IMG/VR virus record: IMGVR_UViG_3300032288_004964
Coordinates: 321,334 to 385,333 of that record
Direction: 5' to 3' (one strand)
Length of the DNA: 64,000 nucleotides
A program made the translations under genes and the position numbers. Under the pieces are notes generated by a model. The model was not told the origin of the DNA. It did not search any database and was given only the letters and a program-made list of their open reading frames with translations. Positions 1,496-64,000 of the stretch are shown here, piece after piece. Each line of letters opens with the position of its first letter. Position 1 is the first letter of the stretch.

Positions 1496-1519
1496 TTAAA
1501 ATATACTTACAATACAAAC

Positions 1520-1548
1520 AAAAAACCCACCTTATGGTGGGTTTTTTT
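1520..1548. terminator. bidirectional intrinsic terminator
   Basis: aaaaaacccacc-ttat-ggtgggtttttt between convergent genes. Confidence 0.85.
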
Positions 1549-2623: not shown

Positions 2624-3682
2624 TTATACTGTAAAGTTTTTCGATCCTTTTAATTTCTCAAGAGTGTGTTTCTCATCAAGTTCTATGTTTTTAGGTATTC
2701 TAACATATATCTTAACATAAAGATCACCTAATCCATAATGAACATCAGGTATTCCTTTACCATTTACTCTATAAATCTTACCGTGTTCTGTTCCAGGTTC
2801 AATAGCTATTGTTAAGTCACCATGTGGTGTTTTAACTTTAACATTAGCACCAAGTATAGCATCTAAAACCGAAATAGTTTTTTCAATGTTAATATTGTTT
2901 CTATCTCTTGTAAAATATGTTTCTTTTATTTCTTCTATTATAATTTGAAGATTTCCAGGTAACCCATTTCTAGTGTAGTTACCAAATCCATTCATTGTTA
3001 GCTGAATATCATTTGAAACCCCTGCTGGTATTTCTACATCAACTGTTTGTTCTTTTGAAACAGTACCATCACCGTGACAATCACCACATTTACTTTTTAT
3101 TTGCTTACCTGATCCACCACAATCTGGACAAGTTGTAGCTGTTCTAATCTGACCAAATGGTGTGTTTTGAATAACGGTTCTTTGTCCTACACCATTACAA
3201 GGTAAACAATCCTTAACATCTGTTCCTCCTTGACCAGAACATTTTTCGCATCTATCTTGTCTTCTATACTTTAACTTCTTATTAGTACCTTTAAGAATTT
3301 CATCTATTGTTAAACTAACTTTAATTCTCAAATCAGAGCCTTTTGTTTGCCTAGGTTGTCTATTATATCTTTGACCAAAGATATCACCAAATTGACTAAA
3401 AATGTCATCCATGTTGAAACCATGACCTTGTTGACTAAATGGATTTCCTCCACCAAATGGATTACCGGATGCCGATCCAAATCTATCATAGTTTGATTTT
3501 TTTTCAGGATTTGACAATGTGTCATATGCCTCAGCAGCATCTTTGAATTTAGCTTCTGCTTCAGGGTTATCAGGGTTTTTATCGGGGTGATATTGCATAG
3601 CCATCTTTCGATAAGCCTTTTTAATCTCATCATCAGATGCACCCTTATCTACGCCTAGTATGTTATAATAATCTTTACTCAT
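2624..3682 (-). CDS. dnaJ: DnaJ chaperone
   Basis: J-domain with HPD, G/F region, four CxxCxGxG repeats, C-terminal GDLYV. Confidence 0.97.
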
Positions 3683-4018: not shown

Positions 4019-4548
4019 CTTATAATATTTTTAATCTTTATATCTCTTTCTCTTTGTAACTTAATACTAGCTATTTCTTTTTCAATATCATTACACTCTT
4101 TTGTTTTTTCAACTAAATGTGCAATGTAATTATCAACTATTAATGTTAATGTTTCAACTGTTCTATCTAATTTATCAAAGTGTATTAAAGATGATTTGGT
4201 CTTCTTCAACATATCTACTAAGTAATTTAAAAAGTCATCTATATCAAAGTATAACTGAAACAACTCCAATCTTCTATCTCTTAAAAGAGATGGTGGTGTT
4301 ATGTAAACTTTTGCCCAAACTCTCCTAATAGAAGGTAGTATTAAATCTAAAGTTTCAGTTTCATCATCATTATATAAACAACCCTTAAATTCTTCTGTGT
4401 CAAATAAAGTATATTTTTCATTAACAATACTATTTAAAACAGATTCAAATTCATTTACATTTGTAATTCCTTCCAAAAGAGTCTTAAAAAGTAGGCTCTT
4501 ATATTTTGGGTGATTTTTTATCTCTAAAAATGGTATCTTTTCTGACAT
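4012..4548 (-). CDS. hypothetical protein with C-terminal tail motif; capsid-like internal segment
   Basis: LLEGI...LILPSIRRVWAKV; ends RERDIKIKNIIRC. Confidence 0.7.
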   Translation of the reverse strand: MSEKIPFLEIKNHPKYKSLLFKTLLEGITNVNEFESVLNSIVNEKYTLFDTEEFKGCLYNDDETETLDLILPSIRRVWAKVYITPPSLLRDRRLELFQLYFDIDDFLNYLVDMLKKTKSSLIHFDKLDRTVETLTLIVDNYIAHLVEKTKECNDIEKEIASIKLQRERDIKIKNIIRC

Positions 4549-5024
4549 TACTTACCTAAAATAATTTTTGGAAAACGGAATGGTTTTCCATTTAATGAAT
4601 AACCTTTACTAACAACATCAATAATTTTTGATTCACCGATTTCCATAACTTGAATTACTTCATGTATATCTTCATCATATTTTTCAGTTTGAATAACTTC
4701 AATGTTGTGTGACTTCAAAAATGTTTCTAATTTCTGAGCAATTAATTTAACACCACTTTTTGCTGATTCATCTTTGATATTTTTTAGAGCAATAGATAAA
4801 TCATTATCCATGTCAAGAATAGATGATATCATAGAAACCTTTGTATTGTTTTTGATATCTTCTTTTTCTTTAGTCATTCTTCTTTTGTAAGTTTCAAAAT
4901 CAGCATAAAGTCTAACATACTTATCTTCTGATTCTGTTAGTTTTGCTTCTAACTCTTGATACTTCGAAAGTAACTCATCAAAAGGAGTTACAATTCTTTC
5001 CGCGTTTTCTGTATTTTCTTCCAT
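4548..5024 (-). CDS. grpE: GrpE nucleotide exchange factor
   Basis: YVRLYADFETYKRR, DEDIHEVI, VVSKGYSLNGKPFRFPKI. Confidence 0.93.
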   Translation of the reverse strand: MEENTENAERIVTPFDELLSKYQELEAKLTESEDKYVRLYADFETYKRRMTKEKEDIKNNTKVSMISSILDMDNDLSIALKNIKDESAKSGVKLIAQKLETFLKSHNIEVIQTEKYDEDIHEVIQVMEIGESKIIDVVSKGYSLNGKPFRFPKIILGK

Positions 5025-6665: not shown

Positions 6666-6691
6666 TAAGTATATATAAAATATCTTAAAAT

Positions 6692-6719
6692 AAAAAACCC
6701 TACTTAAAGTAGGGTTTTT
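6692..6719. terminator. intrinsic terminator
   Basis: aaaaaaccctact-taa-agtagggtttt. Confidence 0.8.
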
Positions 6720-6721
6720 AA

Positions 6722-7021: not shown

Positions 7022-7096
7022 AATTAAATTTTTATTAGTTTATAAATATTATATAAATCACTTTAGAATTTGTTTTTTTATGATAAGATTTTTTTG

Positions 7097-7104
7097 TATA
7101 TTTG
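7097..7104 (+). promoter_or_regulatory. Bacteroidota -7 element
   Basis: TATATTTG-tagt-ATG(7109). Confidence 0.8.
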
Positions 7105-7108
7105 TAGT

Positions 7109-7525
7109 ATGATAAACGAAACAAAGATTAACTCTATTCAAGAAAAGCTTAAAAAAGCTATCGCTCTTATTGAGAAAGAAGAAAATGTTAAGATTGATTT
7201 TGGCTCAATCTCATTTAATGTTGCTCAATATAGAGCCTCAATGACTGTATCATCACTTGATAAAAGTGAAAAGGTTGAGAAAGTTTATGAATCTGTCTGT
7301 CGTAGATTAGGTTTCACTCAGAATATTATTGGAATGAAATTTGAATCCAGTGGTATGATTTATGAAATAACTGATATAAAAACAAAAAATAGAAAATATC
7401 CAGTTATCGCCAAATCACCAAAGGGTAATTCTTATAAATACTCAGTTGATCATATTAAAAGATTAATTGGTGGTGATAAGATTATAAATAGAAATAAAAA
7501 CTTAGATAAATTACTTGGAGACTAA
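7109..7525 (+). CDS. hypothetical protein with C-terminal tail motif (start revised from 7070)
   Basis: ATG after a 4-nt gap from the promoter; ends INRNKNLDKLLGD. Confidence 0.75.
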   Translation: MINETKINSIQEKLKKAIALIEKEENVKIDFGSISFNVAQYRASMTVSSLDKSEKVEKVYESVCRRLGFTQNIIGMKFESSGMIYEITDIKTKNRKYPVIAKSPKGNSYKYSVDHIKRLIGGDKIINRNKNLDKLLGD

Positions 7526-7754
7526 CATATCATATAAGGTAGCAAATACTAAACTTTATAGAGAATCTAAAGAACTAAAACTTGAATTTCTTTATGAAAC
7601 AGGAGATGCTGCTTATTTTTGTTTAGATGATGGTGGTTATCTTTATTATCTAATAGAAACATTTACCAATGGAAAAATTATGGTATTAGATGAGGATAGT
7701 CATGTTTATTATGACAATAATAGAATATTAAACCTTTTAAGATTAAAGGTTTAG
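7515..7754 (+). CDS. hypothetical protein
   Basis: 79-aa ORF overlapping the upstream stop; ends in TAG. Confidence 0.65.
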   Translation: METNISYKVANTKLYRESKELKLEFLYETGDAAYFCLDDGGYLYYLIETFTNGKIMVLDEDSHVYYDNNRILNLLRLKV

Positions 7755-8569
7755 TTAAACTTTTGCATATACTTTAACTCATATCTATCTATGAATTTAA
7801 GTTTACCACTTTCATGTAGCTCTTTGATTAAATCATCACTTACCCTAACAGGATCAATCATTTCATAAATATAACCATTTTCTTTACAAAAATCCTCAGC
7901 ATATTTTCTTTTACATTCAACATTTTTTGAATTAAAAAGATGTTTTGGTTTACATTCTGTTATTTTATTCTCTGATGGGATAAAAAAGTCTGGATAGTAA
8001 TTCCTTGGTTTATTATCCCAATCAATATATTTAATTCTGAATTTTTTACACTCAGCACTTTGAAACTCTATATTATTCTTTTCAAATGTTATCATACAAG
8101 ATAATTCTTTAAGACTTTTAAAGAATATATCATTATACCAACCACTCCAACCATTACCACTACCATTTGGTGATGGTTTACCATACATATTATTTTTAGA
8201 ACCAGAGTTTCCAATTGAATGTTTCTTTTTATATTCTATCATTTTCTGGTCAGCTGTTTCTTTACCATATTTATATACCCATATATCATAAAAACTCTTA
8301 CCATACATTGGATTATTTTTACCTGATGATATCTTGGACATTTTATCTCTAAACTCTTCTGTTCTATATTTATCTATATTTAGTTTATTAGTTAATACTA
8401 TTTTATCTATAACCTCTTTACTGTGTGACTTCCTATAGAATGGATTATTCTCACCTTTATTACAACATGATCTACAAAGGCTTCTTTTTTCCTTAGCACT
8501 AATCATGTTTTTTAAATTTTTATGTTTTACTTCTTTAAAACATTTTGGACACTCTCTAATATATTCCAT
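7751..8569 (-). CDS. homing endonuclease-like: Zn finger, NUMOD3 repeats, TnsA-like PD-(D/E)XK domain
   Basis: CPKC...CRSC, NNPFYRK/NNPMYGK/NNMYGK repeats, RNYYPDFF...ECKP; TAATATATAC 3 nt before ATG. Confidence 0.8.
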   Translation of the reverse strand: MEYIRECPKCFKEVKHKNLKNMISAKEKRSLCRSCCNKGENNPFYRKSHSKEVIDKIVLTNKLNIDKYRTEEFRDKMSKISSGKNNPMYGKSFYDIWVYKYGKETADQKMIEYKKKHSIGNSGSKNNMYGKPSPNGSGNGWSGWYNDIFFKSLKELSCMITFEKNNIEFQSAECKKFRIKYIDWDNKPRNYYPDFFIPSENKITECKPKHLFNSKNVECKRKYAEDFCKENGYIYEMIDPVRVSDDLIKELHESGKLKFIDRYELKYMQKFN

Positions 8570-17275: not shown

Positions 17276-17328
17276 ATTGTATATATTAAATAATTATTCT
17301 TATTTATTAATTTGTTGTTAATTTTTAG

Positions 17329-17336
17329 TATATTTG
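17329..17336 (+). promoter_or_regulatory. Bacteroidota -7 element
   Basis: TATATTTG-tagt-ATG(17341). Confidence 0.8.
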
Positions 17337-17340
17337 TAGT

Positions 17341-18267
17341 ATGGGTAATATAGGATATTGTTGTATTAATATCTCTCTAAATGAGGGTAAGAGTAAGAAA
17401 GAACAAATAACTGTCAATAGAGGAATGACTAAGAAAACATTTGAGACCAAAGGTCTTGGATATGTATCTGAATTAGCAGTACAGAATATTAATGATCTTG
17501 AGAAAATACTTCAATGGAATTTTAGAAACAATATTCTTGTTTATAGAATGTCAAGTGACATGTTCCCATGTATTGGCTTCTATAAATTGGAAGATTTGCC
17601 AAACTTTAAGCTTATATCTAATAAATTAAAATTAATAGGCGATTACTCAAAATCCAAAGGAATGAGACTTTCCTTTCACCCAACTCACTTCTGTATTCCA
17701 GCTAGTGAAAACCCAATTGTTGTAAAAAATGCTATTGATGAATTAGATAAACATGCTCAAATAATGGATATAATGGGGTTAGACCAGACACATTATTACC
17801 CAATTAATATACATGTTAACACAACTAAACCAACAAGAGAAGAAGCCGCTGAGAGATTTTGCCTTCAATTTTATAATCTAAGTGAATCTTGTCAAAAAAG
17901 ATTAGTAGTTGAAAATGATGATGGTCCAAATCAATATTCAACTAAAATTTTATATGATTTGATTTATAAAAAAATAGGAATTCCGATTACACATGATTTT
18001 CACCATCATAATTACGGACCTCAGGATATCTCACAAGAAGAAGCAATTAGACTTGCTTGTTCTACCTGGGGTGATATAACACCAATGACTCATATGAGTT
18101 CACCAAAAACATTAGAAGATAACTCAGGAAAACAAACAGCACATGCAGATTACATTTATGAGGAAATTAAAACATTTGGTCTTGACTTTGATACAGAGAT
18201 TGAGGCGAAAGCTAAAGACCTCGCAGTTATTAGATACAGAAATCAATTTAAAGTTCTTAAAGGGTGA
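17341..18267 (+). CDS. uvsE: UV-damage endonuclease (UvsE/UvdE)
   Basis: GYCCIN, YRMSSDMFP, RLSFHP, INIH, LVVEND, DFHHH, HADY, EAKAKDLA. Confidence 0.93.
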   Translation: MGNIGYCCINISLNEGKSKKEQITVNRGMTKKTFETKGLGYVSELAVQNINDLEKILQWNFRNNILVYRMSSDMFPCIGFYKLEDLPNFKLISNKLKLIGDYSKSKGMRLSFHPTHFCIPASENPIVVKNAIDELDKHAQIMDIMGLDQTHYYPINIHVNTTKPTREEAAERFCLQFYNLSESCQKRLVVENDDGPNQYSTKILYDLIYKKIGIPITHDFHHHNYGPQDISQEEAIRLACSTWGDITPMTHMSSPKTLEDNSGKQTAHADYIYEEIKTFGLDFDTEIEAKAKDLAVIRYRNQFKVLKG

Positions 18268-36234: not shown

Positions 36235-38931
36235 ATGAAAAAATTGCTTTTAATAGCAACATTCTTGATTACAAGCCTGTTGTCTTATTCTCAAGCACCT
36301 GCTAATGATAATTGTAGCGGTGCTCAAAGTCTCGGAACACTTCCAACACCAGCCGCCTGTCCAAGTGGTATTGGTTCATCGGTCAATGTTTCAGGTACAA
36401 ATATTAATGCGACAGGACCATTGCCATATACAACATTATTAGGATGTCAGACTGGTGGTAATCAGCCTGGTCCAGCTTTAGATGTATGGTACTCTTTTGT
36501 TGCATCAGGTAATCAAGTTAATATAAATATAACACCTGGTTCTGCTCCATTTTTAGCAAGTCCGGCTATTACACTTTGGACAGGATCTTGTGGGGCTTTA
36601 GTAGGATTTAACTGTGATAATAATGGAACTTTAACTGGTAATAATTCAGTTACATTTCAACCCATGACACCTGGTCAAACATATTACATACAAATAAGTG
36701 GTATGAATGCTACTAATCAGGGAAATTTCAACTTATCTGTGAATTCTTCTAATGATTGTAATAATTGTTTACAAGTTGCTAATCTAACAGTTAGTCCTGC
36801 TCCCACAAATGGAACTTACCCACCAAATACAACAGTTAATTTTTGCTATAATATTTCTTCTTTTACTCAAGTAAGTTCCAATTGGTTACATGGAGTAATA
36901 CCTACTTTTGGGTGTGGGTGGAATTTATCTACACTTACTACAACACCTGCCGCATCTTGTTCTGGTAGTGGAACTTGGAGTTGGTATCCATCTTGGACCA
37001 GTTCAGCAAATGGTTCTACTTGGGGACCTGGATTTGCTTATGATTATAATACATCTCCTGGCAATCCTGGTAATAACTTTGGTGATAACTGTTCAACTCC
37101 TAATTGGAACTTTTGTTGGTCTATTAAAACAAAAGCTGTTTGTAGTCCAACTTGTACAAACTTAAATATTAATATCAATACAACCGGTGATGGTGAGTCT
37201 GGATCTTGGACATCAGTAGCTTGTCTAGGTGATCCAAACTATCAATTTGCAGCAGTTATGTCTTGTTGTAGTTCAACTGCATCCAGTACAAATCCAACTT
37301 GTTTTGGTGGTTCTAATGGTTCAGCAACTGCTATTCCTGGTTCAACCGGTGTTCCTCCATTTACATATTCTTGGAATACAGTTCCCACACAGACTACACA
37401 AACTGCTACTAATTTAAGTGCTGGGGCATATACCTGCACAGTTACTGATTTTAATGGATGTACTTCTACTTGTAATGTTACTATTTCAAATCCTCCTCAA
37501 ATTTTAGTACCAGTAACACAATCAAATGTAACTTGTTTCGGCGGTTCTAATGGATCAGCAACTGCTAACCCATCTGGTGGAGTTGGTCCTTATACTTATT
37601 CTTGGAATACAGTTCCTACACAAACTACACAAACTGCTACTAATCTAATACCTGGTACATATACTGTAACTGTGGCAAGCTCAAATGGTTGTATAAAAAC
37701 AAACACAGTTAGTATTACTCAACCAACGGCAATAGTTGTAACTACTTCAACTACCAGTGCTTCTTGTGGTAATTCAAATGGTTCAGCAACTGCTAACCCA
37801 TCTGGTGTTGGTCCTTATACCTATTCTTGGAACACAACACCAGTTCAAACTACACAAACGGCAACAAATATACCATTTGGTAGTTATACTGTTACTGTTA
37901 CAAATAGTAGTGGATGTACTGGGACAACAACTGCTAATGTACCATCAACTGGTAGTGTAAGTGCTACTTCAACATCAACACCAACAAGTTGTTTTGGTAG
38001 TTCAGATGGTTCTGCCACTGCTAATGGATTTGGAGGTACTTTATATACATATCTTTGGAATACAACACCACCTCAAACAAGTCAAACAATTACTGGATTA
38101 CCAGCGGGCGTTTATACTTGTACTATATCAAGTGCTGCTTGTAATGCAACAACAACTATTATAGTTACCGAACCACCTATTATAAATGTAACATACTCAA
38201 CTACTCCATTATCTGGGTGTGTACCATTAGCAGTAACATATAATAATACAACTCCAGGTATATCAAATTGTAGTTGGAATATAAATGGTGTGATTACTAA
38301 TAGTTGTAATGTTACTCAAGTATTTACATCAGGTGGAACATATAACTCAACACTAACTGTAACTGATGCTAATGGTTGTTCAAATTCAACAGGTCCAATA
38401 GTTGCTAATGCTTACCCTATTCCATTTGCTTCTTTTTCTCCAAATCCATCAGTAACTAATTTATTATCACCAACTATTACATTTGATAATATGAGTTCGG
38501 GTGGTAGTTATTTTTGGAATTTTGGTGATGGTAACACATCAAGTAGTCTAAATCCTACAAACACATATGCTGATACAGGAACATATGTGATTAATCTAAC
38601 AGTAACTAGTCAATATGGTTGTTCTGATTCAACCTATTCTACAATACATATAACTGATATTCTCTCTGTTTATATACCTAATGCTTTTACACCTAATGGT
38701 GATGGTAAGAATGATTCATTTTTACCAATTATTTTAGGATTTGATAAATATGAATATTGGATATTTGACCGTTGGGGTGAAATGATATTCAATACAAATT
38801 CTGGTAGATCTTGGGATGGAACTTATAAAGGTAAATTAGTTCAACAAGATGTTTATATTTGTAAGTTAGTAGTTTATGATTTAAATAAGAAAAAGTATGA
38901 ATATACTAATCACATTTCTTTAATTAGATAA
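36235..38931 (+). CDS. secreted SprB-repeat / PKD protein with T9SS type-B (gliding-motility-associated) CTD
   Basis: signal peptide; four SprB-like repeats (TCFGGSNGSATA...YTYSWNT...VTD.NGC); YFWNFGDG PKD; YIPNAFTPNGDGKND...IFDRWG...WDGTYKG. Confidence 0.9.
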   Translation: MKKLLLIATFLITSLLSYSQAPANDNCSGAQSLGTLPTPAACPSGIGSSVNVSGTNINATGPLPYTTLLGCQTGGNQPGPALDVWYSFVASGNQVNINITPGSAPFLASPAITLWTGSCGALVGFNCDNNGTLTGNNSVTFQPMTPGQTYYIQISGMNATNQGNFNLSVNSSNDCNNCLQVANLTVSPAPTNGTYPPNTTVNFCYNISSFTQVSSNWLHGVIPTFGCGWNLSTLTTTPAASCSGSGTWSWYPSWTSSANGSTWGPGFAYDYNTSPGNPGNNFGDNCSTPNWNFCWSIKTKAVCSPTCTNLNININTTGDGESGSWTSVACLGDPNYQFAAVMSCCSSTASSTNPTCFGGSNGSATAIPGSTGVPPFTYSWNTVPTQTTQTATNLSAGAYTCTVTDFNGCTSTCNVTISNPPQILVPVTQSNVTCFGGSNGSATANPSGGVGPYTYSWNTVPTQTTQTATNLIPGTYTVTVASSNGCIKTNTVSITQPTAIVVTTSTTSASCGNSNGSATANPSGVGPYTYSWNTTPVQTTQTATNIPFGSYTVTVTNSSGCTGTTTANVPSTGSVSATSTSTPTSCFGSSDGSATANGFGGTLYTYLWNTTPPQTSQTITGLPAGVYTCTISSAACNATTTIIVTEPPIINVTYSTTPLSGCVPLAVTYNNTTPGISNCSWNINGVITNSCNVTQVFTSGGTYNSTLTVTDANGCSNSTGPIVANAYPIPFASFSPNPSVTNLLSPTITFDNMSSGGSYFWNFGDGNTSSSLNPTNTYADTGTYVINLTVTSQYGCSDSTYSTIHITDILSVYIPNAFTPNGDGKNDSFLPIILGFDKYEYWIFDRWGEMIFNTNSGRSWDGTYKGKLVQQDVYICKLVVYDLNKKKYEYTNHISLIR
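37262..38185 (+). repeat. four ~78-aa SprB-like intragenic repeats
   Basis: recurrent ggttcagcaactgcta and tattcttggaa(t/c)aca blocks; boundaries approximate. Confidence 0.75.
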
Positions 38932-40890: not shown

Positions 40891-41457
40891 ATGAAACATT
40901 TAAAATATTTTGAAGCTAAAAAGAAAAATTATCAGGAATTACTAGATGAGTATGCTGAAGATATCATCAGAGTTTTACCTTTATATTATAATAATTTCTC
41001 AACTGATACTTTACATAATTATATTGATGAGTTAATATGGGAATGTAGAGAAGCGGATAGATTAAGAGGAGATGATGAAGTTTTAAGTGAAGAAGTTGTA
41101 AGAGTTTTGATAGATGAAATTAAAGAAGTAGCAGGTAGTTGGTCTTCATCAAAATTACTTGATATTTATTATGATTGTTTACCTCATGTTAAACATATAA
41201 ATAAAGATAAGGTTGAAGTATTAAAAGAGATATTTCTTGACTATTCAGATGAGGGTGGTGAAATATTAATAAGTAAGACAGCTAAATTCCGTGATGAAAG
41301 ATATGAAGTGAGATTAGAGTTGGAAAATGTATTTTTAAAAATAAACTTTGAAGAAGTTTTTGGTAGAGTTAAAGAATTTATGGGAATTGAAAGTTACCAT
41401 ATTACAGGAACAAAAGATTTAATAACAATTGAATTTTGGAAACCTTTACCAAAATAA
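40891..41457 (+). CDS. putative internal virion protein (N-terminal tag)
   Basis: MKHLKYFEA; LKEIFLDYSDEG module. Confidence 0.7.
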   Translation: MKHLKYFEAKKKNYQELLDEYAEDIIRVLPLYYNNFSTDTLHNYIDELIWECREADRLRGDDEVLSEEVVRVLIDEIKEVAGSWSSSKLLDIYYDCLPHVKHINKDKVEVLKEIFLDYSDEGGEILISKTAKFRDERYEVRLELENVFLKINFEEVFGRVKEFMGIESYHITGTKDLITIEFWKPLPK

Positions 41458-41483
41458 AAAACCCACTTTAGAGTGGGTTTTTT
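41456..41483. terminator. bidirectional intrinsic terminator
   Basis: aaaaaacccact-ttag-agtgggtttttt. Confidence 0.85.
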
Positions 41484-41484
41484 A

Positions 41485-42459: not shown

Positions 42460-42518
42460 TTCAAAAAATGTATTTTGTTTTATATATTAAAAAATGTTGA
42501 TTTTGTTTATTTTTTTAG

Positions 42519-42526
42519 TATATTTG
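42519..42526 (+). promoter_or_regulatory. Bacteroidota -7 element
   Basis: TATATTTG-tgta-ATG(42531). Confidence 0.8.
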
Positions 42527-42530
42527 TGTA

Positions 42531-43001
42531 ATGGAAAAAAACCAGTTAAATAACTTAATTAGATTCTGTTTTAATTTCCATAGAAGTATGGATTGTGACT
42601 GGACTATGCAACATCCAAGTTATATTTTAGAGAAGTGGAATAAGTATATTGGTGTTAAACCTAATAAGTTAGAATTATATCCATCTAATGACCTGACTAT
42701 CAAGTGGTTAAAAACTTGGAATGTTAGTAATAAAGATTGGGAAGAGTTAAAAGAGATTGTTACTTTTATTCAAGTTGTTAATATGAGAGCACTTGTTGTA
42801 TCTAGTGGAAATAAAGGTAATAGATTTATACAATGGTCACCATCTGAACTATTAGATGAATTTGAAAGATTGATTGGTGATAAAAATAAAATAAACAAAG
42901 ATGAATATAAAGGTTTGCATGAACTAGTTGATAGAGAAGTTGAATATTGGCTATGGCAAACAGATAACAAAAGAGATTATAATTTAAATTTATTAGTATA
43001 A
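42531..43001 (+). CDS. hypothetical protein with C-terminal tail motif
   Basis: ends NKRDYNLNLLV. Confidence 0.75.
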   Translation: MEKNQLNNLIRFCFNFHRSMDCDWTMQHPSYILEKWNKYIGVKPNKLELYPSNDLTIKWLKTWNVSNKDWEELKEIVTFIQVVNMRALVVSSGNKGNRFIQWSPSELLDEFERLIGDKNKINKDEYKGLHELVDREVEYWLWQTDNKRDYNLNLLV

Positions 43002-47040: not shown

Positions 47041-47334
47041 TTGAAAGTTTATTGTAAAAGAACCTATCTCGATACAAATCAAAACTTCTTTAAGATAAGA
47101 GGTAAAGGTTATGGTGAAAGTTATGCTAAGTGGGAAAAGAATAAGTATTATTCAATAAGACTACCACAAGATATAGAAAGAAAAATGGGCATTTTCTATT
47201 ATATACAAACCGAAGTAAATGAAGATAGTTATTCACCAATAAAGAAAAAAGAATTTGAAAAGTACTTTATAGATATAGATGAATTAAGAAATAATAAAAT
47301 AGAACAAATATTAAATGGAACCTCTGAAATTTAA
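47041..47334 (+). CDS. hypothetical protein with C-terminal tail motif (TTG start)
   Basis: ends ELRNNKIEQIL; similar to 50171-50464. Confidence 0.7.
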   Translation: MKVYCKRTYLDTNQNFFKIRGKGYGESYAKWEKNKYYSIRLPQDIERKMGIFYYIQTEVNEDSYSPIKKKEFEKYFIDIDELRNNKIEQILNGTSEI

Positions 47335-47836
47335 CATACAAAATGTAATTTGTATACCAATAAAATCAATGAATGAGCAACAATTGTTTGCTGTTTCTGA
47401 AACATATACAATTGCGTTTACCGCCTTAATGTCTTTCAAAAAAGATGGATTTGAAAAAATCTGGCTTGAGAAAGATGGTGATTATGCTATTGCATTTGAA
47501 ATTGATGGTGAGTTTTCAATAAATCCTATGTACTGTCCTATTACAAAAAAGAATAGAGATTCTATACTTAAGGTTAAACCAATTAAGTCACCTAAGATGC
47601 CAAAGGATGAGAGATCGGTTGGAGCTTATAAGTATTATTTATCTAAAGGATTTGATGTTAAAACTAAGAGTTTAGATAGAAAAGTTGAATACTTAGATAA
47701 TGTCGAAGATGTTGAAGAAATTAATGAAGAGATAATTTTAGATGTTGATATTATTTTGGATAAGATATCTAAATTAGGTGTCGGGTCTTTGAGTAAAGAA
47801 GAAAAGGAATTCTTAGATAATAAAAGCAAAAGTTAA
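47315..47836 (+). CDS. hypothetical protein with DUF6576-like C-terminal helix hairpin
   Basis: VDIILDKISKLGVGSLSKEEKEFL. Confidence 0.7.
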   Translation: MEPLKFNIQNVICIPIKSMNEQQLFAVSETYTIAFTALMSFKKDGFEKIWLEKDGDYAIAFEIDGEFSINPMYCPITKKNRDSILKVKPIKSPKMPKDERSVGAYKYYLSKGFDVKTKSLDRKVEYLDNVEDVEEINEEIILDVDIILDKISKLGVGSLSKEEKEFLDNKSKS

Positions 47837-47888
47837 TCAATTAAACTTTTGTAATTAAATAAAATACAACTTATTAATATTATTAAAA

Positions 47889-48638
47889 ATGAAATTTAGA
47901 TATTTATCAGATACCGAAATACTTAGGTGGAATAAGAGATTAGATAATAGTGGATATTCAGTATATCCGAAACCTAATAATAAATCAGCTGAGCCATATA
48001 TTTGTTTCAAACAAAAAGTAGGATATCAAAATAATGCTATGGGTAGTCAGTTTGTAATTACTACTGATCCTTTTATGAGATATGACTTTGTATTCTCAAT
48101 ATCTAGTAATAGAATTGATAATTTTTTTGAGATTTTTAATAAACTATCTAAAATTCCTTTTGGTAGTAAATCAATTTATGTAGATTTGAATAATGAAAAA
48201 ATTACTGATATTAAATTTACCGATGATATTATTGAAAGTAAAGAAGAAACAAAACATAAAGTATCCGACAAGGAATATATTAGATATACTTACCACTTTG
48301 CTGGTAAGTTATCTAGTATTATGGCTTATGTTATGTATTTAGAAGATGCTATTAATTTCCTAAGTGAGATATTTGGATATAATGAAGATGGATCAGAAGT
48401 TTGTTTGTTAAAATTTCCAATAGGTACACAAGTTTCAACATTGAAAGATAAATCAACAGATTATTTAGTTTTAGATTATGTTTATAGAAAAATGGATGGT
48501 AAGTATTTCATTAGTTATGTTGCTAGTGAAATGATTAAAAGTAATGGTAACTCTATAACATATGGTGAGGTTTTAAACTTCAATGAGAAGGATTTATGTT
48601 ATAGTAGAAATAGTAGAATAGATGATATATTAAATTAA
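47889..48638 (+). CDS. hypothetical protein with C-terminal tail motif
   Basis: ends SRNSRIDDILN. Confidence 0.75.
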   Translation: MKFRYLSDTEILRWNKRLDNSGYSVYPKPNNKSAEPYICFKQKVGYQNNAMGSQFVITTDPFMRYDFVFSISSNRIDNFFEIFNKLSKIPFGSKSIYVDLNNEKITDIKFTDDIIESKEETKHKVSDKEYIRYTYHFAGKLSSIMAYVMYLEDAINFLSEIFGYNEDGSEVCLLKFPIGTQVSTLKDKSTDYLVLDYVYRKMDGKYFISYVASEMIKSNGNSITYGEVLNFNEKDLCYSRNSRIDDILN

Positions 48639-48751
48639 TGAAAGAACTAGAAGATATATTTAATACAGAGGAATTTAAATCACTTCCTTGGATTAAAAGA
48701 TTTTGGATAAGAGTTAAAGTAGCTTTTATACAAACTATAAATATGATGTAA
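48638..48751 (+). CDS. 37-aa hypothetical protein (not in ORF track)
   Basis: MKELEDIFNTEEFKSLPWIKRFWIRVKVAFIQTINMM; TAATG overlap. Confidence 0.55.
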   Translation: MKELEDIFNTEEFKSLPWIKRFWIRVKVAFIQTINMM

Positions 48752-48781
48752 AAAAAATTAGGTTAATACTAATTTTATTTT

Positions 48782-48789
48782 TACATTTG
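48782..48789 (+). promoter_or_regulatory. Bacteroidota -7 element for the tRNA
   Basis: TACATTTG, 9-nt gap to the tRNA 5' end. Confidence 0.7.
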
Positions 48790-48798
48790 TAGATAATT

Positions 48799-48870
48799 GC
48801 AGGTATAGCTCAGTGGTAGAGCAGGATTCTCTAAAAGTCTTTGTCGTGGGTTCGATCCCCGCTACCCGCA
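48799..48870 (+). tRNA. tRNA with anticodon CUA (amber suppressor); CCA not encoded
   Basis: GCAGGTA-TA-GCTC AGTGGTA GAGC-A-GGATT CT[CTA]AA AGTCT-TTGTC-GTGGG TTCGATC CCCGC-TACCCGC-A; full cloverleaf with one A-C mismatch at 3:70. Confidence 0.88.
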
Positions 48871-48886
48871 CTAAAATAAAACAAAC

Positions 48887-49294
48887 ATGAAAAAAATCAT
48901 AACAATTCTGTTCTTATCATTTACCTCTGTTATTTTTGCAAAGGGTAATGATTCAATCTTTGAAAAATCACCAATATTATTTTCAAAGTCAAATTTTAAT
49001 TACAATACTCAAAAGATTAATCTAAAAATGAGTATGTATAAAGACTATAGTTCATCTGATAAGAGAACTGCTGGTTTAGTTTTAATGTTAGCTGGTTTAG
49101 CATTCACAACCGCTTCAATACTTGAAAGTGATGCTGCTTATGGTACTTGGACTAACAATCCTCAACCTGGTAATCCATACAATCAAACTTATACTACAAA
49201 ACCTTTTATTCAACAATTCCCACGTAATATAATGTTAGTAGTTGGTATTGGATTTACATTCTCTGGTTTTGGTGTTATGGCTAGTAATAAGTAA
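48887..49294 (+). CDS. membrane protein with signal peptide
   Basis: N-terminal signal; two hydrophobic helices. Confidence 0.7.
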   Translation: MKKIITILFLSFTSVIFAKGNDSIFEKSPILFSKSNFNYNTQKINLKMSMYKDYSSSDKRTAGLVLMLAGLAFTTASILESDAAYGTWTNNPQPGNPYNQTYTTKPFIQQFPRNIMLVVGIGFTFSGFGVMASNK

Positions 49295-49367
49295 TGAAGA
49301 ATTTAAATAATTTTTTAATTGAATAGAAATTAGATAAAGGGAGGGAAGGCATAAGAATATATACATT

Positions 49368-50075
49368 ATGGAACATTTTGTATATATTCATAAAAACCCT
49401 GTAAATGAAGAGGTATTTTATATTGGTCAAGGAACAAGACATAGAGATAAAAATGAAAGAGCTTATTCTAAAAGGTCAAGAAGTAAATGGTGGTATAATT
49501 ATGTTAATAAGTATGGAATGCCTATAGTTGAGATAGTGGCTACCAATCTCAGTAAAGAAGATGCTGATAAATTAGAAATAGACTTAATAAAGTCATATGG
49601 TAGAAAAGATATAAATGAAGGTACTTTGGTTAACCTAACCGATGGTGGTGATGGTAGTGGGAAAAGATCTTTAGAATATTGTGAACAATTATCATTGAGA
49701 ATGAGAGGAGAGAATCATCCTATGTGGGGTAAAAAACACAATAAAAATTGGGTAGAAAATAACTCTAAATCGAAAATTGGTAAAAAGTTATCAGAGGAAA
49801 CTAAAAAGAAAATGTCTGAATCAAGAAAAGGTCAGAAAAGAACAGATGAAACCAAAAGAAAAATGTCTGAATCATTATCAGGTGATAGAAATCCTATGTA
49901 TGGAAGAACTGGTGATAGAAATCCAGCTTCTAAATTAACTTGGAATATAGTTAAAGAGATAAGAGATTCATATAAAGAAGGTAATACTTCTATAAGAAAA
50001 CTAGCTAAAAAATATAATGTTTCAAACATAACAATTGAAAATGTTATTAAACATAGAACTTGGAAGGAATTATAA
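49368..50075 (+). CDS. GIY-YIG homing endonuclease with NUMOD3 repeats and C-terminal HTH
   Basis: FVYIH...FYIGQG...R; LEIDLI; NLTDGG; HPMWGKKH, SEETKKKMS, NPMYG. Confidence 0.88.
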   Translation: MEHFVYIHKNPVNEEVFYIGQGTRHRDKNERAYSKRSRSKWWYNYVNKYGMPIVEIVATNLSKEDADKLEIDLIKSYGRKDINEGTLVNLTDGGDGSGKRSLEYCEQLSLRMRGENHPMWGKKHNKNWVENNSKSKIGKKLSEETKKKMSESRKGQKRTDETKRKMSESLSGDRNPMYGRTGDRNPASKLTWNIVKEIRDSYKEGNTSIRKLAKKYNVSNITIENVIKHRTWKEL

Positions 50076-50093
50076 AAACTAATAGATAAAGAA

Positions 50094-50171
50094 ATGAATC
50101 AAGCTTATGAACTTGGATCTGTATCAAAACAAGATTATCGCAACTATAAATTAGAGAAGTTAGGAATTTAA
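50094..50171 (+). CDS. 25-aa peptide with C-terminal tail motif, possible remnant
   Basis: MNQAYELGSVSKQDYRNYKLEKLGI; TAATG coupling to the next gene. Confidence 0.45.
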   Translation: MNQAYELGSVSKQDYRNYKLEKLGI

Positions 50172-50464
50172 TGGCATACGGTGATGGTGATATTATAAAA
50201 ACTAAATTCCTTTGTAAAACAACATGTAGTGGTGGTTCCTATGGTAATATCAAAGAAAGATTTATTAAAGGAAAATGGTATGATGGTGAATATGAAACTT
50301 GGTGGTTTGAAGGTGGTTATAAAATGAATGGTGGTCACCGAAAATACTGGGCTATAAATGAAGGTGGTGTTAGAGAAGATATTGGAAAGTCTATGTTCAA
50401 AATAATTTTTGAAACAGATACAAATGAATTAAGAGATAATAAAATAGAACAAATATTAAAATAA
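50171..50464 (+). CDS. hypothetical protein with C-terminal tail motif
   Basis: ends ELRDNKIEQILK. Confidence 0.75.
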   Translation: MAYGDGDIIKTKFLCKTTCSGGSYGNIKERFIKGKWYDGEYETWWFEGGYKMNGGHRKYWAINEGGVREDIGKSMFKIIFETDTNELRDNKIEQILK

Positions 50465-60572: not shown

Positions 60573-61252
60573 TGAAATATCTAAAATCACATATGATATT
60601 TGAAAGTTTGAATAAACATTTCAAACTAAGCCAATCTATTTTAAATGAACTAAGAGGTCAGAATAAAATAATCGAAGATGTTGAAGATATTATGTTAGAA
60701 GTTGGTGATTCTTGGGGATTTGAAGTTCCACCATCTTATGAATTAAGAGATTCAAGTAATCCACAAAATCAACACTATGCTGAGTTAAGAACTCAAAAGA
60801 ATTTAGACTACTTTGGGATGGATGAAGGTGATTTTGATGAGCCTGTAGAAGATTATAAATGGACTATTGATTTTGTTAATGATATCAGAAGTGGTAAAAG
60901 AAATAAATTAATCTTAGATATAGATTTTCAATATGCTAATGATTCAAATGGATTTAAACCACTTAAATTAAGTGATGAACAAAAGAAAACCTTAGATGAA
61001 GTAGAAGAAAGACTAAAATCTATTGGATGTGAAGTAGATTATGAATACAGCAATGATGGTAGTAATCTTGGACCAGGTCTTTGGAAAATAAGAGTTAGTG
61101 TTCCGGTTAAGTTTCAACCAAATAAAGTAATAAGTGGTTTAGATGGATTTTCAAAAGATTTTATAAAAGATTTTACTAAATTTGTAAAAGATTATTCAAT
61201 TGATATAGATGGTCAGGTTAAACTATCAAATCTAATAAGAAGAGCGAAATGA
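60572..61252 (+). CDS. putative internal virion protein (N-terminal tag)
   Basis: MKYLKSHMIFES. Confidence 0.7.
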   Translation: MKYLKSHMIFESLNKHFKLSQSILNELRGQNKIIEDVEDIMLEVGDSWGFEVPPSYELRDSSNPQNQHYAELRTQKNLDYFGMDEGDFDEPVEDYKWTIDFVNDIRSGKRNKLILDIDFQYANDSNGFKPLKLSDEQKKTLDEVEERLKSIGCEVDYEYSNDGSNLGPGLWKIRVSVPVKFQPNKVISGLDGFSKDFIKDFTKFVKDYSIDIDGQVKLSNLIRRAK

Positions 61253-61644
61253 AACATTTGAAGAAGTATGAAAATAAATCTGATGATTGGAGCGAATCAG
61301 AATTTAATGTAATAAAAGATATCTTATTAGAGATTAAAGATAGTTATCCTACTATAGATGGTGAAATATTAAGATATGATGAAAAAGCTTATTTATCAAA
61401 GCCTGAATTCACAATTAACGGTAAACTTATTTACCTAATAAAATTAGATTGTTCTAATATAAAAATAGAAGGTGATACTTATAGTTTAGAATACTATGAT
61501 AGCAAAATTAAGTTTATGAATCTAGTTAAAGAAGTTTGCTGGAGATTAGAAAGAGCTTTAGATGTTAAGGTTAGAATACCTAACTTTGATGATTTCGATC
61601 ATTGGCAATATGAAGAAATGAAAATACAATTAATTAAACTTTAG
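61249..61644 (+). CDS. putative internal virion protein (N-terminal tag)
   Basis: MKHLKKYENK; IKDILLEIKD; ends in TAG. Confidence 0.7.
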   Translation: MKHLKKYENKSDDWSESEFNVIKDILLEIKDSYPTIDGEILRYDEKAYLSKPEFTINGKLIYLIKLDCSNIKIEGDTYSLEYYDSKIKFMNLVKEVCWRLERALDVKVRIPNFDDFDHWQYEEMKIQLIKL

Positions 61645-63886: not shown

Positions 63887-63905
63887 TAATTAAAAACTTA
63901 TAACT

Positions 63906-64000
63906 ATGACAAACGAGTATGAAATGCAAAACTTCTGGAGATTAGAAATTCAGAATGATGAAAAAGAAAAAATAAAAGACGAGAACTATTGTTATTATAG
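63906..64000 (+). CDS. partial ORF running off the window end
   Basis: MTNEYEMQNFWRLEIQNDEKEK... Confidence 0.5.
   Translation, partial: MTNEYEMQNFWRLEIQNDEKEKIKDENYCYY

What the first reader, a model, noticed from the sequence alone, without database searches (positions are those of the whole stretch)
48782..48870. Promoter-driven amber (CUA) suppressor tRNA in a region that reads normally in code 11
Seen: a complete cloverleaf with loop CT-CTA-AA, short variable arm, G1-C72, A73 and its own TACATTTG promoter. ORFs here are intact under the standard code and only a few end in TAG (for example 1564, 2615, 7754, 21097, 32554, 61644). Established: some Bacteroidota phages (Lak, certain crAss-like) recode TAG and carry suppressor tRNAs. 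Inference: TAG recoding limited to genes elsewhere, programmed readthrough, or disruption of host termination. The charged amino acid cannot be assigned from sequence.
Basis: partly seen in the sequence, partly recalled or inferred. Interest (0 to 1): 0.8.

Follow-up and report, generated by a model that had tools for sequence, protein, structure and literature searches.

The report
Amber suppressor tRNA in standard-code megaphage
A freshwater giant phage that reads its own genes with the ordinary genetic code still carries a well-formed tRNA that reads the UAG stop codon, at a genomic spot where its relatives keep an oddly shaped version of the same tRNA, so this stop-reading tRNA seems to be kept for something other than rewriting the phage's genetic code.

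Summary
Window 48799-48870 (+) is a canonical 72-nt tRNA (Rfam 59.5 bits) with anticodon CUA at 48831-48833. A TACATTTG motif lies 9 nt upstream. Contigs from two other freshwater runs carry the same CUA.

The window is the last 64 kb of a 385-kb contig from a freshwater megaphage of the Mahaphage clade. It is about 80% identical in protein to LR745206 and only about 22% to Lak.

I sampled about 176 kb (46%) of this contig, including terminase, capsid, sheath and neck genes, plus the whole 635-kb LR745206. None of it shows in-frame TAG. TAG stops are not conserved between orthologues (0 of 90 pairs). Recoding elsewhere and programmed readthrough therefore find no support.

Relatives that ARAGORN calls tRNA-free carry a tRNA-like gene at the same place, behind the same promoter motif. 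It is about 80 nt, with an 8-bp acceptor stem, a 4-bp T stem, an 8-nt linker and a long D hairpin. The anticodon is CUA in 14 of 15 distinct sequences, and covariation strongly supports the fold. The window lineage swapped in a canonical core and kept CUA.

One relative has CUG, and the phage encodes a GlnRS, so glutamine is my best guess for the inserted residue. The benefit to the phage is unknown.

The parts
48782..48789 (+). TACATTTG, a Bacteroidota -7 type promoter motif (TAnnTTTG), 9 nt upstream of the tRNA
   Evidence: Located. It reads TATATTTG in strains X2 and X4. A TAnnTTTG motif lies 9-19 nt upstream of every homologous tRNA(CUA) gene examined. Across the window it is only modestly enriched before gene starts.
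48799..48870 (+). Canonical 7/5 cloverleaf elongator tRNA, 72 nt, discriminator A73, no encoded CCA
   Evidence: ARAGORN; Rfam tRNA 59.5 bits; cloverleaf minimum-free-energy fold; identical in a Logan contig (L002).
48831..48833 (+). Anticodon CTA (reads UAG), flanked by U33 and A37
   Evidence: Unchanged in contigs of runs X2 and X4. The same U33-CUA-A37 occurs in 14 of 15 distinct non-canonical homologues.
48801..48801 (+). Acceptor position 3: A here (A3.C70 mismatch), G in related strains (G3-C70)
   Evidence: One search lists 48801 A>G in X2 and X4. The homologue in L270 also appears to have A3.C70 (my reading of the sequence).
47889..48638 (+). Conserved upstream neighbour, 249 aa, no family assignment; marks the syntenic position of the tRNA(CUA) locus
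   Evidence: tblastn synteny in L028, L029, L032, L253-L256, L258 and L277.
48887..49294 (+). Downstream gene, 135 aa, hydrophobic N-terminus, starting 16 nt after the tRNA; probably on the same transcript
   Evidence: Sequence; homologues follow the tRNA-like gene in L253, L254, L029 and L277. Co-transcription is an inference.
49368..50075 (+). NUMOD3 homing-endonuclease-like gene, present in this strain but missing or replaced in close strains; marks the spot as recombination-prone
   Evidence: Pfam NUMOD3. Depth is zero in X2 and X4 across part of the gene (near zero elsewhere), and X4 has a joint from 49301 to 50186 with 438 other letters in between. Absent from L253, L032 and L256.

Best explanation
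This is a working amber-decoding elongator tRNA gene of a freshwater, Bacteroidota-infecting megaphage that uses the standard code. It is not part of a genome-wide TAG reassignment. It occupies a locus that has carried a promoter-driven tRNA(CUA) throughout a subclade of these phages. Most relatives have a non-canonical version there: an 8-bp acceptor stem, a 4-bp T stem, an 8-nt acceptor-to-D linker and a 5-6 bp D hairpin. In the window's lineage the interior of that gene was replaced by a canonical core resembling tRNA-Gly, while the acceptor stem, A73, the CUA anticodon, the promoter and the flanks were kept.

Proposed mechanism, all inferred: the host RNA polymerase transcribes the gene from the TAnnTTTG promoter, probably together with the downstream 135-aa gene. 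RNase P and a CCA-adding enzyme mature it. It is charged, most likely with glutamine, by the phage-encoded or the host GlnRS. It then competes with release factor 1 at UAG codons.

The phage itself is buffered against this. It has no in-frame TAG, only about 6.5% of its genes stop at TAG, and the next in-frame stop usually follows within a few codons. The benefit is therefore most likely general UAG readthrough that perturbs host termination or cushions amber mutations in a very large AT-rich genome, rather than decoding of recoded phage genes.
For: The gene is a real, canonical tRNA with CUA and the same anticodon in independent samples.

Standard code: coverage in code 11 is about the same as with TAG read as sense, across the window and all walked loci. 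No gene is split by TAG. Of 128 tblastn matches of LR745206 proteins to this genome, only 5 contain a stop, each within the first 13 aligned residues. The large terminase, a 560-aa Gp23-like capsid protein and a 1314-aa sheath homologue are intact. LR745206 as a whole gives 0.888, 0.910 and 0.915 for code 11, TAG-sense and TGA-sense. Recoded control loci are detected.

Conserved locus: about 80-nt tRNA-like genes with CUA sit at the syntenic site in L253, L256, L032, L028 (LR745206) and L029 (LR756502). There are 15 distinct family sequences in all. 22 base pairs form in 93.8% of cells against 66.8% in shuffles, 17 pairs show double changes, and the covariation score is 0.747 against 0.222, reached by 0 of 500 shuffles. 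The covariance model separates the family (65-94 bits) from ordinary tRNAs (45 bits or less); the window tRNA scores 29 bits.

Interior replaced: the flanks and acceptor stem align with L253, the interior does not.

Glutamine leads: L254 carries the same scaffold with CUG, one base away from CUA. The phage encodes a GlnRS (TIGR00440, 645 bits) directly after two tRNA-Gln genes. Published TAG-recoded phages reassign TAG to glutamine.

Buffering: 13 of 200 genes stop at TAG. In LR745206 the median extension past TAG is 6 codons.
Against: There is no direct evidence of transcription, processing, charging or suppression.

54% of the contig, and any part of the genome outside it, was not examined.

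G1-C72 and A73 are not what E. coli GlnRS prefers (U1-A72, G73, from my own knowledge). The phage's own tRNA-Gln genes have U1-A72. The body resembles tRNA-Gly: 110 of 112 cellular tRNAs sharing its 5' half are tRNA-Gly. Glycine or lysine remain possible.

The window copy has an A3.C70 mismatch that close strains lack.

Two late genes, the terminase and the gp13-like neck gene, end in TAG here. That would be odd if suppression were strong.

TAG stops show no special back-up stops compared with TAA stops.

No target or benefit has been identified.
Confidence: 0.62

Rival explanations
1. The tRNA serves a code-15 style reassignment confined to genes elsewhere in the genome, as in Lak and some crAss-like phages. 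Those genes simply lie in the part not sampled.
For: Lak phages belong to the same broad clade, recode TAG and carry suppressor tRNAs, with recoded modules scattered along the genome. 54% of the 385-kb contig was not read, and the genome may be larger than the contig, since relatives reach 635-642 kb.
Against: The genes most often recoded in such phages, structural and packaging genes, are intact here: terminase, capsid, sheath and neck. 176 kb shows no gain when TAG is read as sense. The complete genome of LR745206, which carries the homologous tRNA(CUA), is standard code throughout. Its only long open extension past a TAG has a composition that does not look like protein. 80 terminase loci of the clade show no signal.
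Confidence: 0.08
2. Programmed readthrough: the tRNA exists to extend one or a few specific TAG-terminated phage proteins, giving a minor longer isoform, as in the Q-beta A1 protein.
For: Several real genes end in TAG with short open extensions: the gp13-like neck gene (+18 codons), the terminase (+5), and 61249-61644 (+11).
Against: None of 90 orthologue pairs between this genome and LR745206 keeps a TAG stop. The orthologues of the gp13-like and terminase genes end in TAA at the same position. Extension lengths after TAG are no longer than after TAA.
Confidence: 0.07
3. The RNA is tRNA-shaped but does not act in decoding. It could be a processing signal for the downstream mRNA, a decoy for a host anticodon nuclease or tRNA-targeting defence, or a regulator. 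The conserved UCUAA loop would then be a protein-binding site.
For: The relatives' fold is unusual: 8/4 stems, an 8-nt linker, and a mismatch at positions 31 and 39 in most members, which may leave a 9-nt loop. A gene starts 16 nt downstream. No decoding target was found.
Against: The window lineage replaced the odd scaffold with a fully canonical elongator tRNA and kept exactly CUA, U33 and A37. That fits ribosomal decoding better than recognition of a special shape. Three members have perfectly canonical 7-nt loops (L261, L270, L288). The total acceptor-plus-T length of 12 bp matches that of working tRNAs, and 8/4 tRNAs are known to function in translation (PMC5389517).
Confidence: 0.12
4. 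The gene is a neutral passenger in a recombination hot spot next to a homing endonuclease, and it is drifting (A3.C70 mismatch).
For: The adjacent NUMOD3 gene varies between strains. L254 has a 3-kb insertion at the site. L033 and L034 lack any copy. The window copy has an acceptor mismatch.
Against: The locus keeps a structured, promoter-driven CUA tRNA across relatives whose neighbouring protein is only 28-91% identical, with many compensatory changes. Family members also occur in contigs that share no detectable neighbouring genes with the window.
Confidence: 0.08

Closest known systems
Suppressor tRNA(CUA) of TAG-recoded (code 15) phages such as Lak megaphages and some crAss-like phages (Devoto 2019, PMC6784885; Borges et al., bioRxiv 10.1101/2021.08.26.457843; Peters 2022, PMC9523058)
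   Same: A phage-encoded CUA tRNA in a low-GC phage of Bacteroidota hosts. It belongs to the same broad Mahaphage clade as Lak. TAG is the rarest stop codon. Glutamine is the leading candidate residue.
   Different: This genome has no in-frame TAG in 176 kb that includes late genes, and none appears in a complete close relative. It comes from freshwater, not gut. Its neck protein is only about 22% identical to Lak's. The tRNA is maintained over deep divergence without any recoding.
Suppressor tRNAs carried by standard-code relatives of recoded phages, proposed as a step towards recoding (Borges et al.)
   Same: A standard-code phage with depleted TAG stops that carries a suppressor tRNA.
   Different: The published example is a TGA suppressor in one Agate phage, read as a recent acquisition. 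Here the CUA tRNA locus is old and conserved across a whole subclade, which does not fit a short-lived intermediate.
E. coli supE (glnV) amber suppressor: tRNA-Gln CUG changed to CUA at position 36 (my own knowledge)
   Same: Within the non-canonical family, L253 (CUA) and L254 (CUG) differ in the anticodon at exactly that position.
   Different: The direction here seems reversed. CUA is the common state, and CUG is seen once and never in IMG/VR. The acceptor end (G1-C72, A73) is not of the tRNA-Gln type.
8/4 and 9/3 tRNAs: allo-tRNAs and the 8/4 tRNA-His and tRNA-Ser of bacteria and phages (Mukai et al., PMC5389517)
   Same: The relatives' version has an 8-bp acceptor stem and a 4-bp T stem (12 bp in total), a long D stem and an anticodon stem of up to 6 bp. 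8/4 tRNA-His also has A73.
   Different: There is no long variable arm, which defines allo-tRNAs. There is an extra 8-nt linker between the acceptor and D stems. The family has a dedicated CUA anticodon. The window's own tRNA is canonical 7/5.
tRNA-Pyl (the label ARAGORN gives)
   Same: CUA anticodon. The relatives can form a 6-bp anticodon stem.
   Different: The window tRNA has two nucleotides between the acceptor and D stems, G18G19, a standard T loop and a 5-nt variable loop. I did not look for a pyl gene.

Membership tests
Canonical elongator tRNA | 7-bp acceptor stem, 5-bp T stem, cloverleaf with U8, A14, G18G19, U33 and a T-loop of the TTCRA type; score above the Rfam gathering threshold | tested here: met
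   Rfam 59.5 bits against 29; ARAGORN; cloverleaf minimum-free-energy fold; residues read. One A3.C70 mismatch, which is G3-C70 in close strains.
Amber suppressor tRNA | Anticodon CUA in a 7-nt loop with U33 and a purine at position 37 | tested here: met
   Loop CUCUAAA, anticodon at 48831-48833; confirmed in independent contigs.
Amber suppressor tRNA | Is aminoacylated and inserts an amino acid at UAG in vivo | not testable with these tools
   Needs a reporter assay, tRNA sequencing or proteomics.
Code-15 (TAG-recoded) phage system | In-frame TAG codons in phage genes, typically structural and lysis genes; higher coding density when TAG is read as sense | tested here: not met
   About 176 kb of this genome and all of LR745206 show no gain. 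Recoded control loci do. 54% of the contig was not sampled.
Code-15 (TAG-recoded) phage system | Accessory code-change genes such as a phage RF2 | not tested
   No release-factor Pfam family appears among the genes listed, but I made no dedicated search.
tRNA-Pyl | One nucleotide between the acceptor and D stems, a small D loop without G18G19, a 3-nt variable loop and an atypical T loop | tested here: not met
   The window tRNA has two linker nucleotides, G18G19, a 5-nt variable loop and a TTCGATC T loop.
tRNA-Gly | Acceptor G1-C72, C2-G71, G3-C70 with U73 and anticodon C35 C36 (E. coli identity set, my own knowledge) | tested here: not met
   The acceptor stem and D arm are of the tRNA-Gly type: 110 of 112 cellular tRNAs with the same 5' half are tRNA-Gly. 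The discriminator is A73, not U73, and positions 35-36 are U and A.
tRNA-Gln / supE-type suppressor | Derived from, or interconvertible with, a CUG tRNA by a change at position 36; a cognate GlnRS is available | tested here: inconclusive
   One orthologue, L254, has CUG on the same scaffold, and the phage encodes a GlnRS. The acceptor features (G1-C72, A73) differ from the phage's own tRNA-Gln, and no CUG member exists in IMG/VR.
Non-canonical 8/4 tRNA(CUA) family of the relatives (model R1) | 8-bp acceptor stem, 4-bp T stem, 8-nt linker ending in TAAT, 5-6 bp D hairpin; R1 score of 65 bits or more | tested here: not met
   The window tRNA scores 29.2 bits, within the range of ordinary tRNAs. 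It matches the family in position, promoter, acceptor stem and anticodon but not in structure.
Allo-tRNA (Mukai et al.) | 8/4 or 9/3 acceptor branch together with a long variable arm | tested here: not met
   The relatives have 8/4 stems but a variable region of only 5-7 nt. The window tRNA is 7/5.

The most novel reading that the evidence does not exclude
A subclade of standard-code freshwater megaphages has maintained, over deep divergence, a dedicated promoter-driven UAG-reading tRNA with an architecture that, as far as I could find, has not been described: 8/4 stems, an 8-nt acceptor-to-D linker, a long D hairpin and often a mismatch at positions 31 and 39. ARAGORN misses it. The window lineage has swapped a canonical core into the same gene. 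If this is right, phage suppressor tRNAs have a selected role other than decoding recoded phage genes, for example sabotaging host UAG termination or buffering amber mutations. Surveys of phage suppressor tRNAs would then be undercounting them.
Probability: 0.45. Interest if true: 0.75.

Novelty: new variant of a known kind. Interest (0 to 1): 0.6.

Why it matters
Phage suppressor tRNAs are usually explained as the tool that lets a recoded phage read its own late genes. Here the same kind of tRNA is conserved in phages that have nothing recoded. This makes one question directly testable: what does a stop-codon-reading tRNA do for a standard-code virus?

It also gives a concrete case of what Borges et al. 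suspected, that phage suppressor tRNAs escape detection because they are non-canonical. ARAGORN found none at the homologous locus in any relative, including the complete genome LR745206. Rfam reached only 24.6-29.9 bits on the three loci I scanned.

Finally, a natural pair of canonical and 8/4 amber tRNAs that share one acceptor stem, together with a phage GlnRS, could be useful material for work on tRNA identity and orthogonal translation.

Tried and rejected
- **Close paralogue among the relative's tRNAs.** I looked for one among the 59 tRNAs of LR745206. The best match shares only 53 of 72 positions and none has CUA, so a simple anticodon mutation of a resident tRNA is rejected.
- **BLAST of the tRNA against phage records**. 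It gave only generic tRNA similarity (Trp, Lys, Ile and other suppressors). This does not reveal identity.
- **BLAST of the non-canonical tRNA**. No match at all.
- **Exact-pattern scan of JGI metagenome contigs** for the acceptor, D arm and CUA loop. No hits, not even the source contig.
- **My first conclusion that relatives lack the tRNA**. It rested on ARAGORN and was wrong. Aligning the intergenic regions overturned it.
- **The longest open extension past a TAG in LR745206** (78 aa, then TAG, then 81 codons). The translated extension has a composition that does not look like protein, so I rejected it as a recoded gene.
- **Back-up stops after TAG.** I found no difference from TAA.
- **More distant Mahaphages LR756504 and LR756501.** No family member within 20 kb either side of the syntenic gene.
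- **Scan for CUG versions of the scaffold in IMG/VR.** None found.
- **Scan that did not specify the anticodon.** It re-found three known CUA loci and added one borderline member with anticodon UUU (L329, 59.5 bits).
- **GlnRS anticodon-binding residues.** The residues that I recall, from my own knowledge, as contacting the anticodon in E. coli GlnRS (R341, R402, R410) are conserved in the phage enzyme. There is no sign of retuning towards A36.
- **Single-sequence folds of the non-canonical members** disagree with one another. Only the alignment-based structure is reliable.
Full report
**1. The observation**

ARAGORN finds a single tRNA in the window, at 48799-48871 on the + strand, with anticodon cta. 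Rfam's tRNA model matches 48799-48870 from end to end at 59.5 bits (gathering score 29, E = 2.4e-10). It is the only Rfam match in the window.

The sequence folds into a cloverleaf. It has a 7-bp acceptor stem (G1-C72, C2-G71, A3.C70 mismatch), U8, A14, G18G19, the anticodon loop CU-CUA-AA (anticodon at 48831-48833), a 5-nt variable loop, the T loop TTCGATC and discriminator A73. No CCA is encoded. TACATTTG lies at 48782-48789.

The window has 28.7% G+C. It is 93.6% covered by 90 ORFs under code 11, whose stops are TAA 75, TGA 10 and TAG 5. The description is correct, except that its first coordinate is the promoter motif rather than the tRNA.

**2. Is the anticodon real?**

The same tRNA sequence is present in an independent Logan contig (L002). 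Contigs from two further runs, from different studies labelled freshwater or unlabelled, span the gene: X2 over 47170-49301 with 8 differences, and X4 over 47700-49301 with 27 differences. Neither has a difference in the anticodon.

The differences near the gene are 48784 C>T, which makes the upstream motif TATATTTG, and 48801 A>G, which turns A3.C70 into a Watson-Crick G3-C70 pair. These are assembled contigs, not raw reads.

**3. What genome is this?**

The window is the last 64 kb of JGI contig Ga0335290_1363915, also filed as IMGVR_UViG_3300032288_004964 (385,333 bp). Two ENA scaffolds from another sample, of 177,753 and 207,191 bp, carry the same proteins. Runs that hold the sequence are labelled freshwater, groundwater, lake, plankton and drinking water.

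The gp13-like neck protein (window 1564-2364) is 82% identical to that of LR745206 (634,780 bp) and 77% to that of LR756502 (642,428 bp). It is 38-44% identical to the 636- and 735-kb genomes, and only 22% to the Lak phages and to jumbo phages of Tenacibaculum and Chryseobacterium.

These LR accessions match in length the largest genomes of Al-Shayeb et al. That paper places those genomes, together with Lak, in the Mahaphage clade and predicts Bacteroidetes hosts (PMC7162821).

A protein with SprB, PKD and CHU_C domains in the window points the same way. That CHU_C is a type IX secretion sorting domain typical of Bacteroidota is my own knowledge.

**4. Is TAG recoded anywhere?**

I walked along the contig and jumped to the packaging and structural region. 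This covered JGI coordinates 264.6-385.3 kb (window, L003, L035, L036, L130, L292). It also covered 55 kb around the terminase (L076, plus L131, L132, L290 and L291 from the near-identical ENA scaffold). That is about 176 kb, or 46% of the contig.

- In every piece, the fraction covered by ORFs of 100 aa or more is about the same in code 11 as with TAG read as sense. The gain is no larger than the control in which TGA is read as sense.
- No ORF pair is joined by a TAG in a real gene frame.
- Of 128 tblastn matches of LR745206 proteins to this genome, only five contain a stop, all within the first 13 aligned residues, upstream of the true start.
- The large terminase (PHROG terminase families), a 560-aa Gp23-like capsid protein, a 1314-aa sheath homologue and the gp13-like neck gene are all intact.
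- The complete LR745206 genome gives 0.888, 0.910 and 0.915 for code 11, TAG-sense and TGA-sense, with no local peak.
- The 80 terminase loci of the clade in IMG/VR show no signal.
- The measure does work. Other phage contigs recovered with a CUA tRNA rise from 0.81-0.86 to 0.92-0.96 when TAG is read as sense, and rise less for TGA (L006, L009, L010, L018).

**5. Programmed readthrough?**

In a non-redundant set of 200 genes from the sampled part, 13 end in TAG. These include the terminase (+5 codons to the next stop) and the gp13-like gene (+18).

Among 90 orthologue pairs with LR745206, none has TAG in both genomes. Eight TAG stops in LR745206 are TAA or TGA here, and four pairs show the reverse, TAG here and TAA in LR745206.

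In LR745206 the median extension past TAG is 6 codons, the same as past TAA. The single long open extension there has a composition that does not look like protein. I found no conserved readthrough target.

**6. The locus in relatives**

ARAGORN finds no tRNA at the syntenic position in any relative. It finds no CUA tRNA among the 59 tRNAs of LR745206. At first this looked like a lineage-specific acquisition next to a NUMOD3 homing-endonuclease gene.

Aligning the intergenic regions showed otherwise. L253, L256, L032, LR745206 (L028 22482-22562) and LR756502 (L029 14116-14195) each have, behind a TATATTTG or TATCTTTG motif, an 80-81-nt tRNA-like gene at the same place. On the three loci I scanned (L253, L256, L032), Rfam's tRNA model reaches only 24.6-29.9 bits.

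A pattern scan of IMG/VR added more copies, in contigs of 25 to 476 kb with 28-35% G+C.

On 14 distinct sequences, RNAalifold predicts an 8-bp acceptor stem, a 4-bp T stem and a 5-bp anticodon stem. With the D hairpin added, 22 pairs form in 93.8% of cells, against 66.8% in shuffles and 42-48% when the partners are slid. 17 pairs show changes on both sides. The covariation score is 0.747 against 0.222, reached by 0 of 500 shuffles.

Between the acceptor stem and the D hairpin lies an 8-nt linker ending in TAAT. The D loop keeps GG and the T loop is standard. The pair at positions 31 and 39 is a mismatch in most members, which leaves either a 9-nt loop or a 7-nt loop closed by C.A. Three members have a clean 7-nt loop.

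A covariance model built on these sequences separates the family (65-94 bits, 20 loci) from ordinary tRNAs (45 bits or less). The window tRNA scores 29.2 bits.

U33-CUA-A37 is present in all 14 sequences. For the sequences found by the pattern scan this was imposed by the pattern. For the five found by synteny it was not.

**7. The window copy is a replacement**

The window gene shares with L253 the promoter region, the 3' flank, the acceptor stem (identical to L253's in the G3 form seen in strains X2 and X4) and A73. Its D arm and anticodon stem are unrelated to L253's.

L253's neighbouring proteins are 81-97% identical to the window's, so the interior cannot have diverged by point mutation. 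It was exchanged for a canonical core while the CUA anticodon was kept. That exchange is inferred from the alignment, not observed.

The canonical form is present in strains that are at least 98% identical. The next relatives all have the 8/4 form.

The spot is recombination-prone. The NUMOD3 gene at 49368-50075 is missing or replaced in X2 and X4. L254 has a 3-kb insertion there. L033 and L034 have no copy.

A canonical CUA tRNA with a very similar core exists in another huge-phage contig (L014).

**8. Which amino acid?**

Cellular tRNAs with the same 5' half (with G at position 3) are tRNA-Gly in 110 of 112 cases. Those have U73 and C35 C36, whereas this tRNA has A73 and U35 A36.

Three leads point to glutamine:

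- L254, a syntenic relative, has the 8/4 scaffold of L253 with CUG instead of CUA, a single change at position 36, and scores 87 bits. A CUG tRNA in a standard-code genome would be harmless only if it carried glutamine.
- The phage encodes a full GlnRS (TIGR00440, 645 bits; E = 2.3e-173 to E. coli GlnRS over nearly its whole length) directly after two tRNA-Gln(UUG) genes, plus a GluRS.
- TAG-recoded phages reassign TAG to glutamine.

Against glutamine: G1-C72 and A73 differ from the phage's own tRNA-Gln genes, which have U1-A72. CUG versions of the scaffold are absent from IMG/VR. One borderline member in a GC-richer contig has anticodon UUU (L329). Glutamine is a best guess, not a result.

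**9. Mechanism and what remains unknown**

Shown:
- a canonical CUA tRNA gene;
- a conserved upstream promoter-like motif;
- a standard-code genome, as far as sampled;
- a conserved family of tRNA(CUA) genes at the same locus, with strong covariation;
- a phage-encoded GlnRS.

Inferred:
- transcription by the host polymerase from the TAnnTTTG motif;
- maturation, and charging with glutamine;
- competition with release factor 1 at UAG codons.

The phage tolerates this well: it has few TAG stops, short extensions and no in-frame TAG.

Long conservation without recoding argues against a short-lived step on the way to recoding. It points to a direct benefit. I think the most likely benefit is general UAG readthrough that disturbs host termination or softens amber mutations in a very large AT-rich genome. 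Nothing here tests that.

**10. Comparison with what is known**

Phage suppressor tRNAs, TAG-to-glutamine recoding, and a standard-code relative of recoded phages that carries a suppressor tRNA are published. So are 8/4 tRNAs, including phage 8/4 tRNA-His and tRNA-Ser (PMC5389517).

The following appear to be new:
- a CUA tRNA locus conserved across a standard-code megaphage subclade;
- its particular 8/4 architecture with a long linker and a short variable region;
- its replacement by a canonical core in one lineage.

My literature searches found no description of these, but they cover open-access text only. I rate the finding a new variant of a known kind, with interest 0.6.

Noticed in passing
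L292 7276-8910 and 1-1321 (JGI contig about 264.6-273.5 kb, outside the window): The phage encodes a full-length GlnRS (TIGR00440, 645 bits), with a 10-residue insertion just before the HIGH motif relative to E. coli GlnRS. It lies directly after two tRNA-Gln(UUG) genes. A GluRS-type gene (tRNA-synt_1c + Anticodon_2) runs off the end of the locus.
   Followed up: partly
L130 7416-7501 and 8650-8726 (the same genes as L292 17010-17095 and 18244-18320): ARAGORN reports two tRNA-like genes with four-base 'anticodons' (agta, attc). They may be further non-canonical tRNAs, or tRNAs with small insertions, in this phage's tRNA cluster.
   Followed up: no
window 49368-50075: The NUMOD3 homing-endonuclease-like gene is present in this strain but missing or replaced in close strains: X4 has 438 other letters between 49301 and 50186. 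A second NUMOD3-like gene lies at 7751-8569.
   Followed up: partly
window 63900-64000 (end of the contig): By coordinate arithmetic, the JGI contig and ENA scaffold_9 end within about 100 nt of each other here. The two ENA scaffolds (177,753 + 207,191 bp) add up to almost exactly the JGI contig length. This suggests a repeat or a physical genome end at this point.
   Followed up: no
window 36235-38931: An 898-aa protein with SprB, PKD and CHU_C domains (CHU_C being, from my own knowledge, a type IX secretion sorting domain) and internal tandem repeats of about 230 nt (37289-38023). It is a marker for a Bacteroidota host and possibly a surface-displayed phage protein.
   Followed up: no
window 1515-1548, 6687-6720, 41451-41484: A shared terminator-like hairpin family (AAAAACCC-stem-GGGTTTTTT) at the ends of genes.
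   Followed up: no
window 17307-17344, 42497-42534, 7075-7112: A repeated GTATATTTGTAGTATG-type element places the TAnnTTTG motif only 4 nt before the start codon of several genes (also at 2430 and 38951). This suggests leaderless or near-leaderless mRNAs.
   Followed up: partly
window 2624-3682 and 4548-5024; L036 1370-3505; L035/L036 glycosyltransferase cluster: The phage encodes DnaJ, GrpE and a ClpB-like AAA+ chaperone. It also has a long run of glycosyltransferase, sugar-nucleotide and UDP-galactopyranose mutase genes.
   Followed up: no
L329 10722-10802: A tRNA-like gene on the same scaffold (8/4 stems, AACCTAAT linker), but with anticodon UUU, discriminator U73 and an encoded CCA, in a GC-richer 116-kb viral contig (R1 59.5 bits). 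The scaffold may therefore not be limited to CUA.
   Followed up: partly
L008 621-777, L020 8650-8806, L011, L018: Several other huge-phage contigs carry two different CUA tRNAs side by side, one of them with an unusual D arm (CCGCTCTTGGTATAGTGGC...).
   Followed up: no
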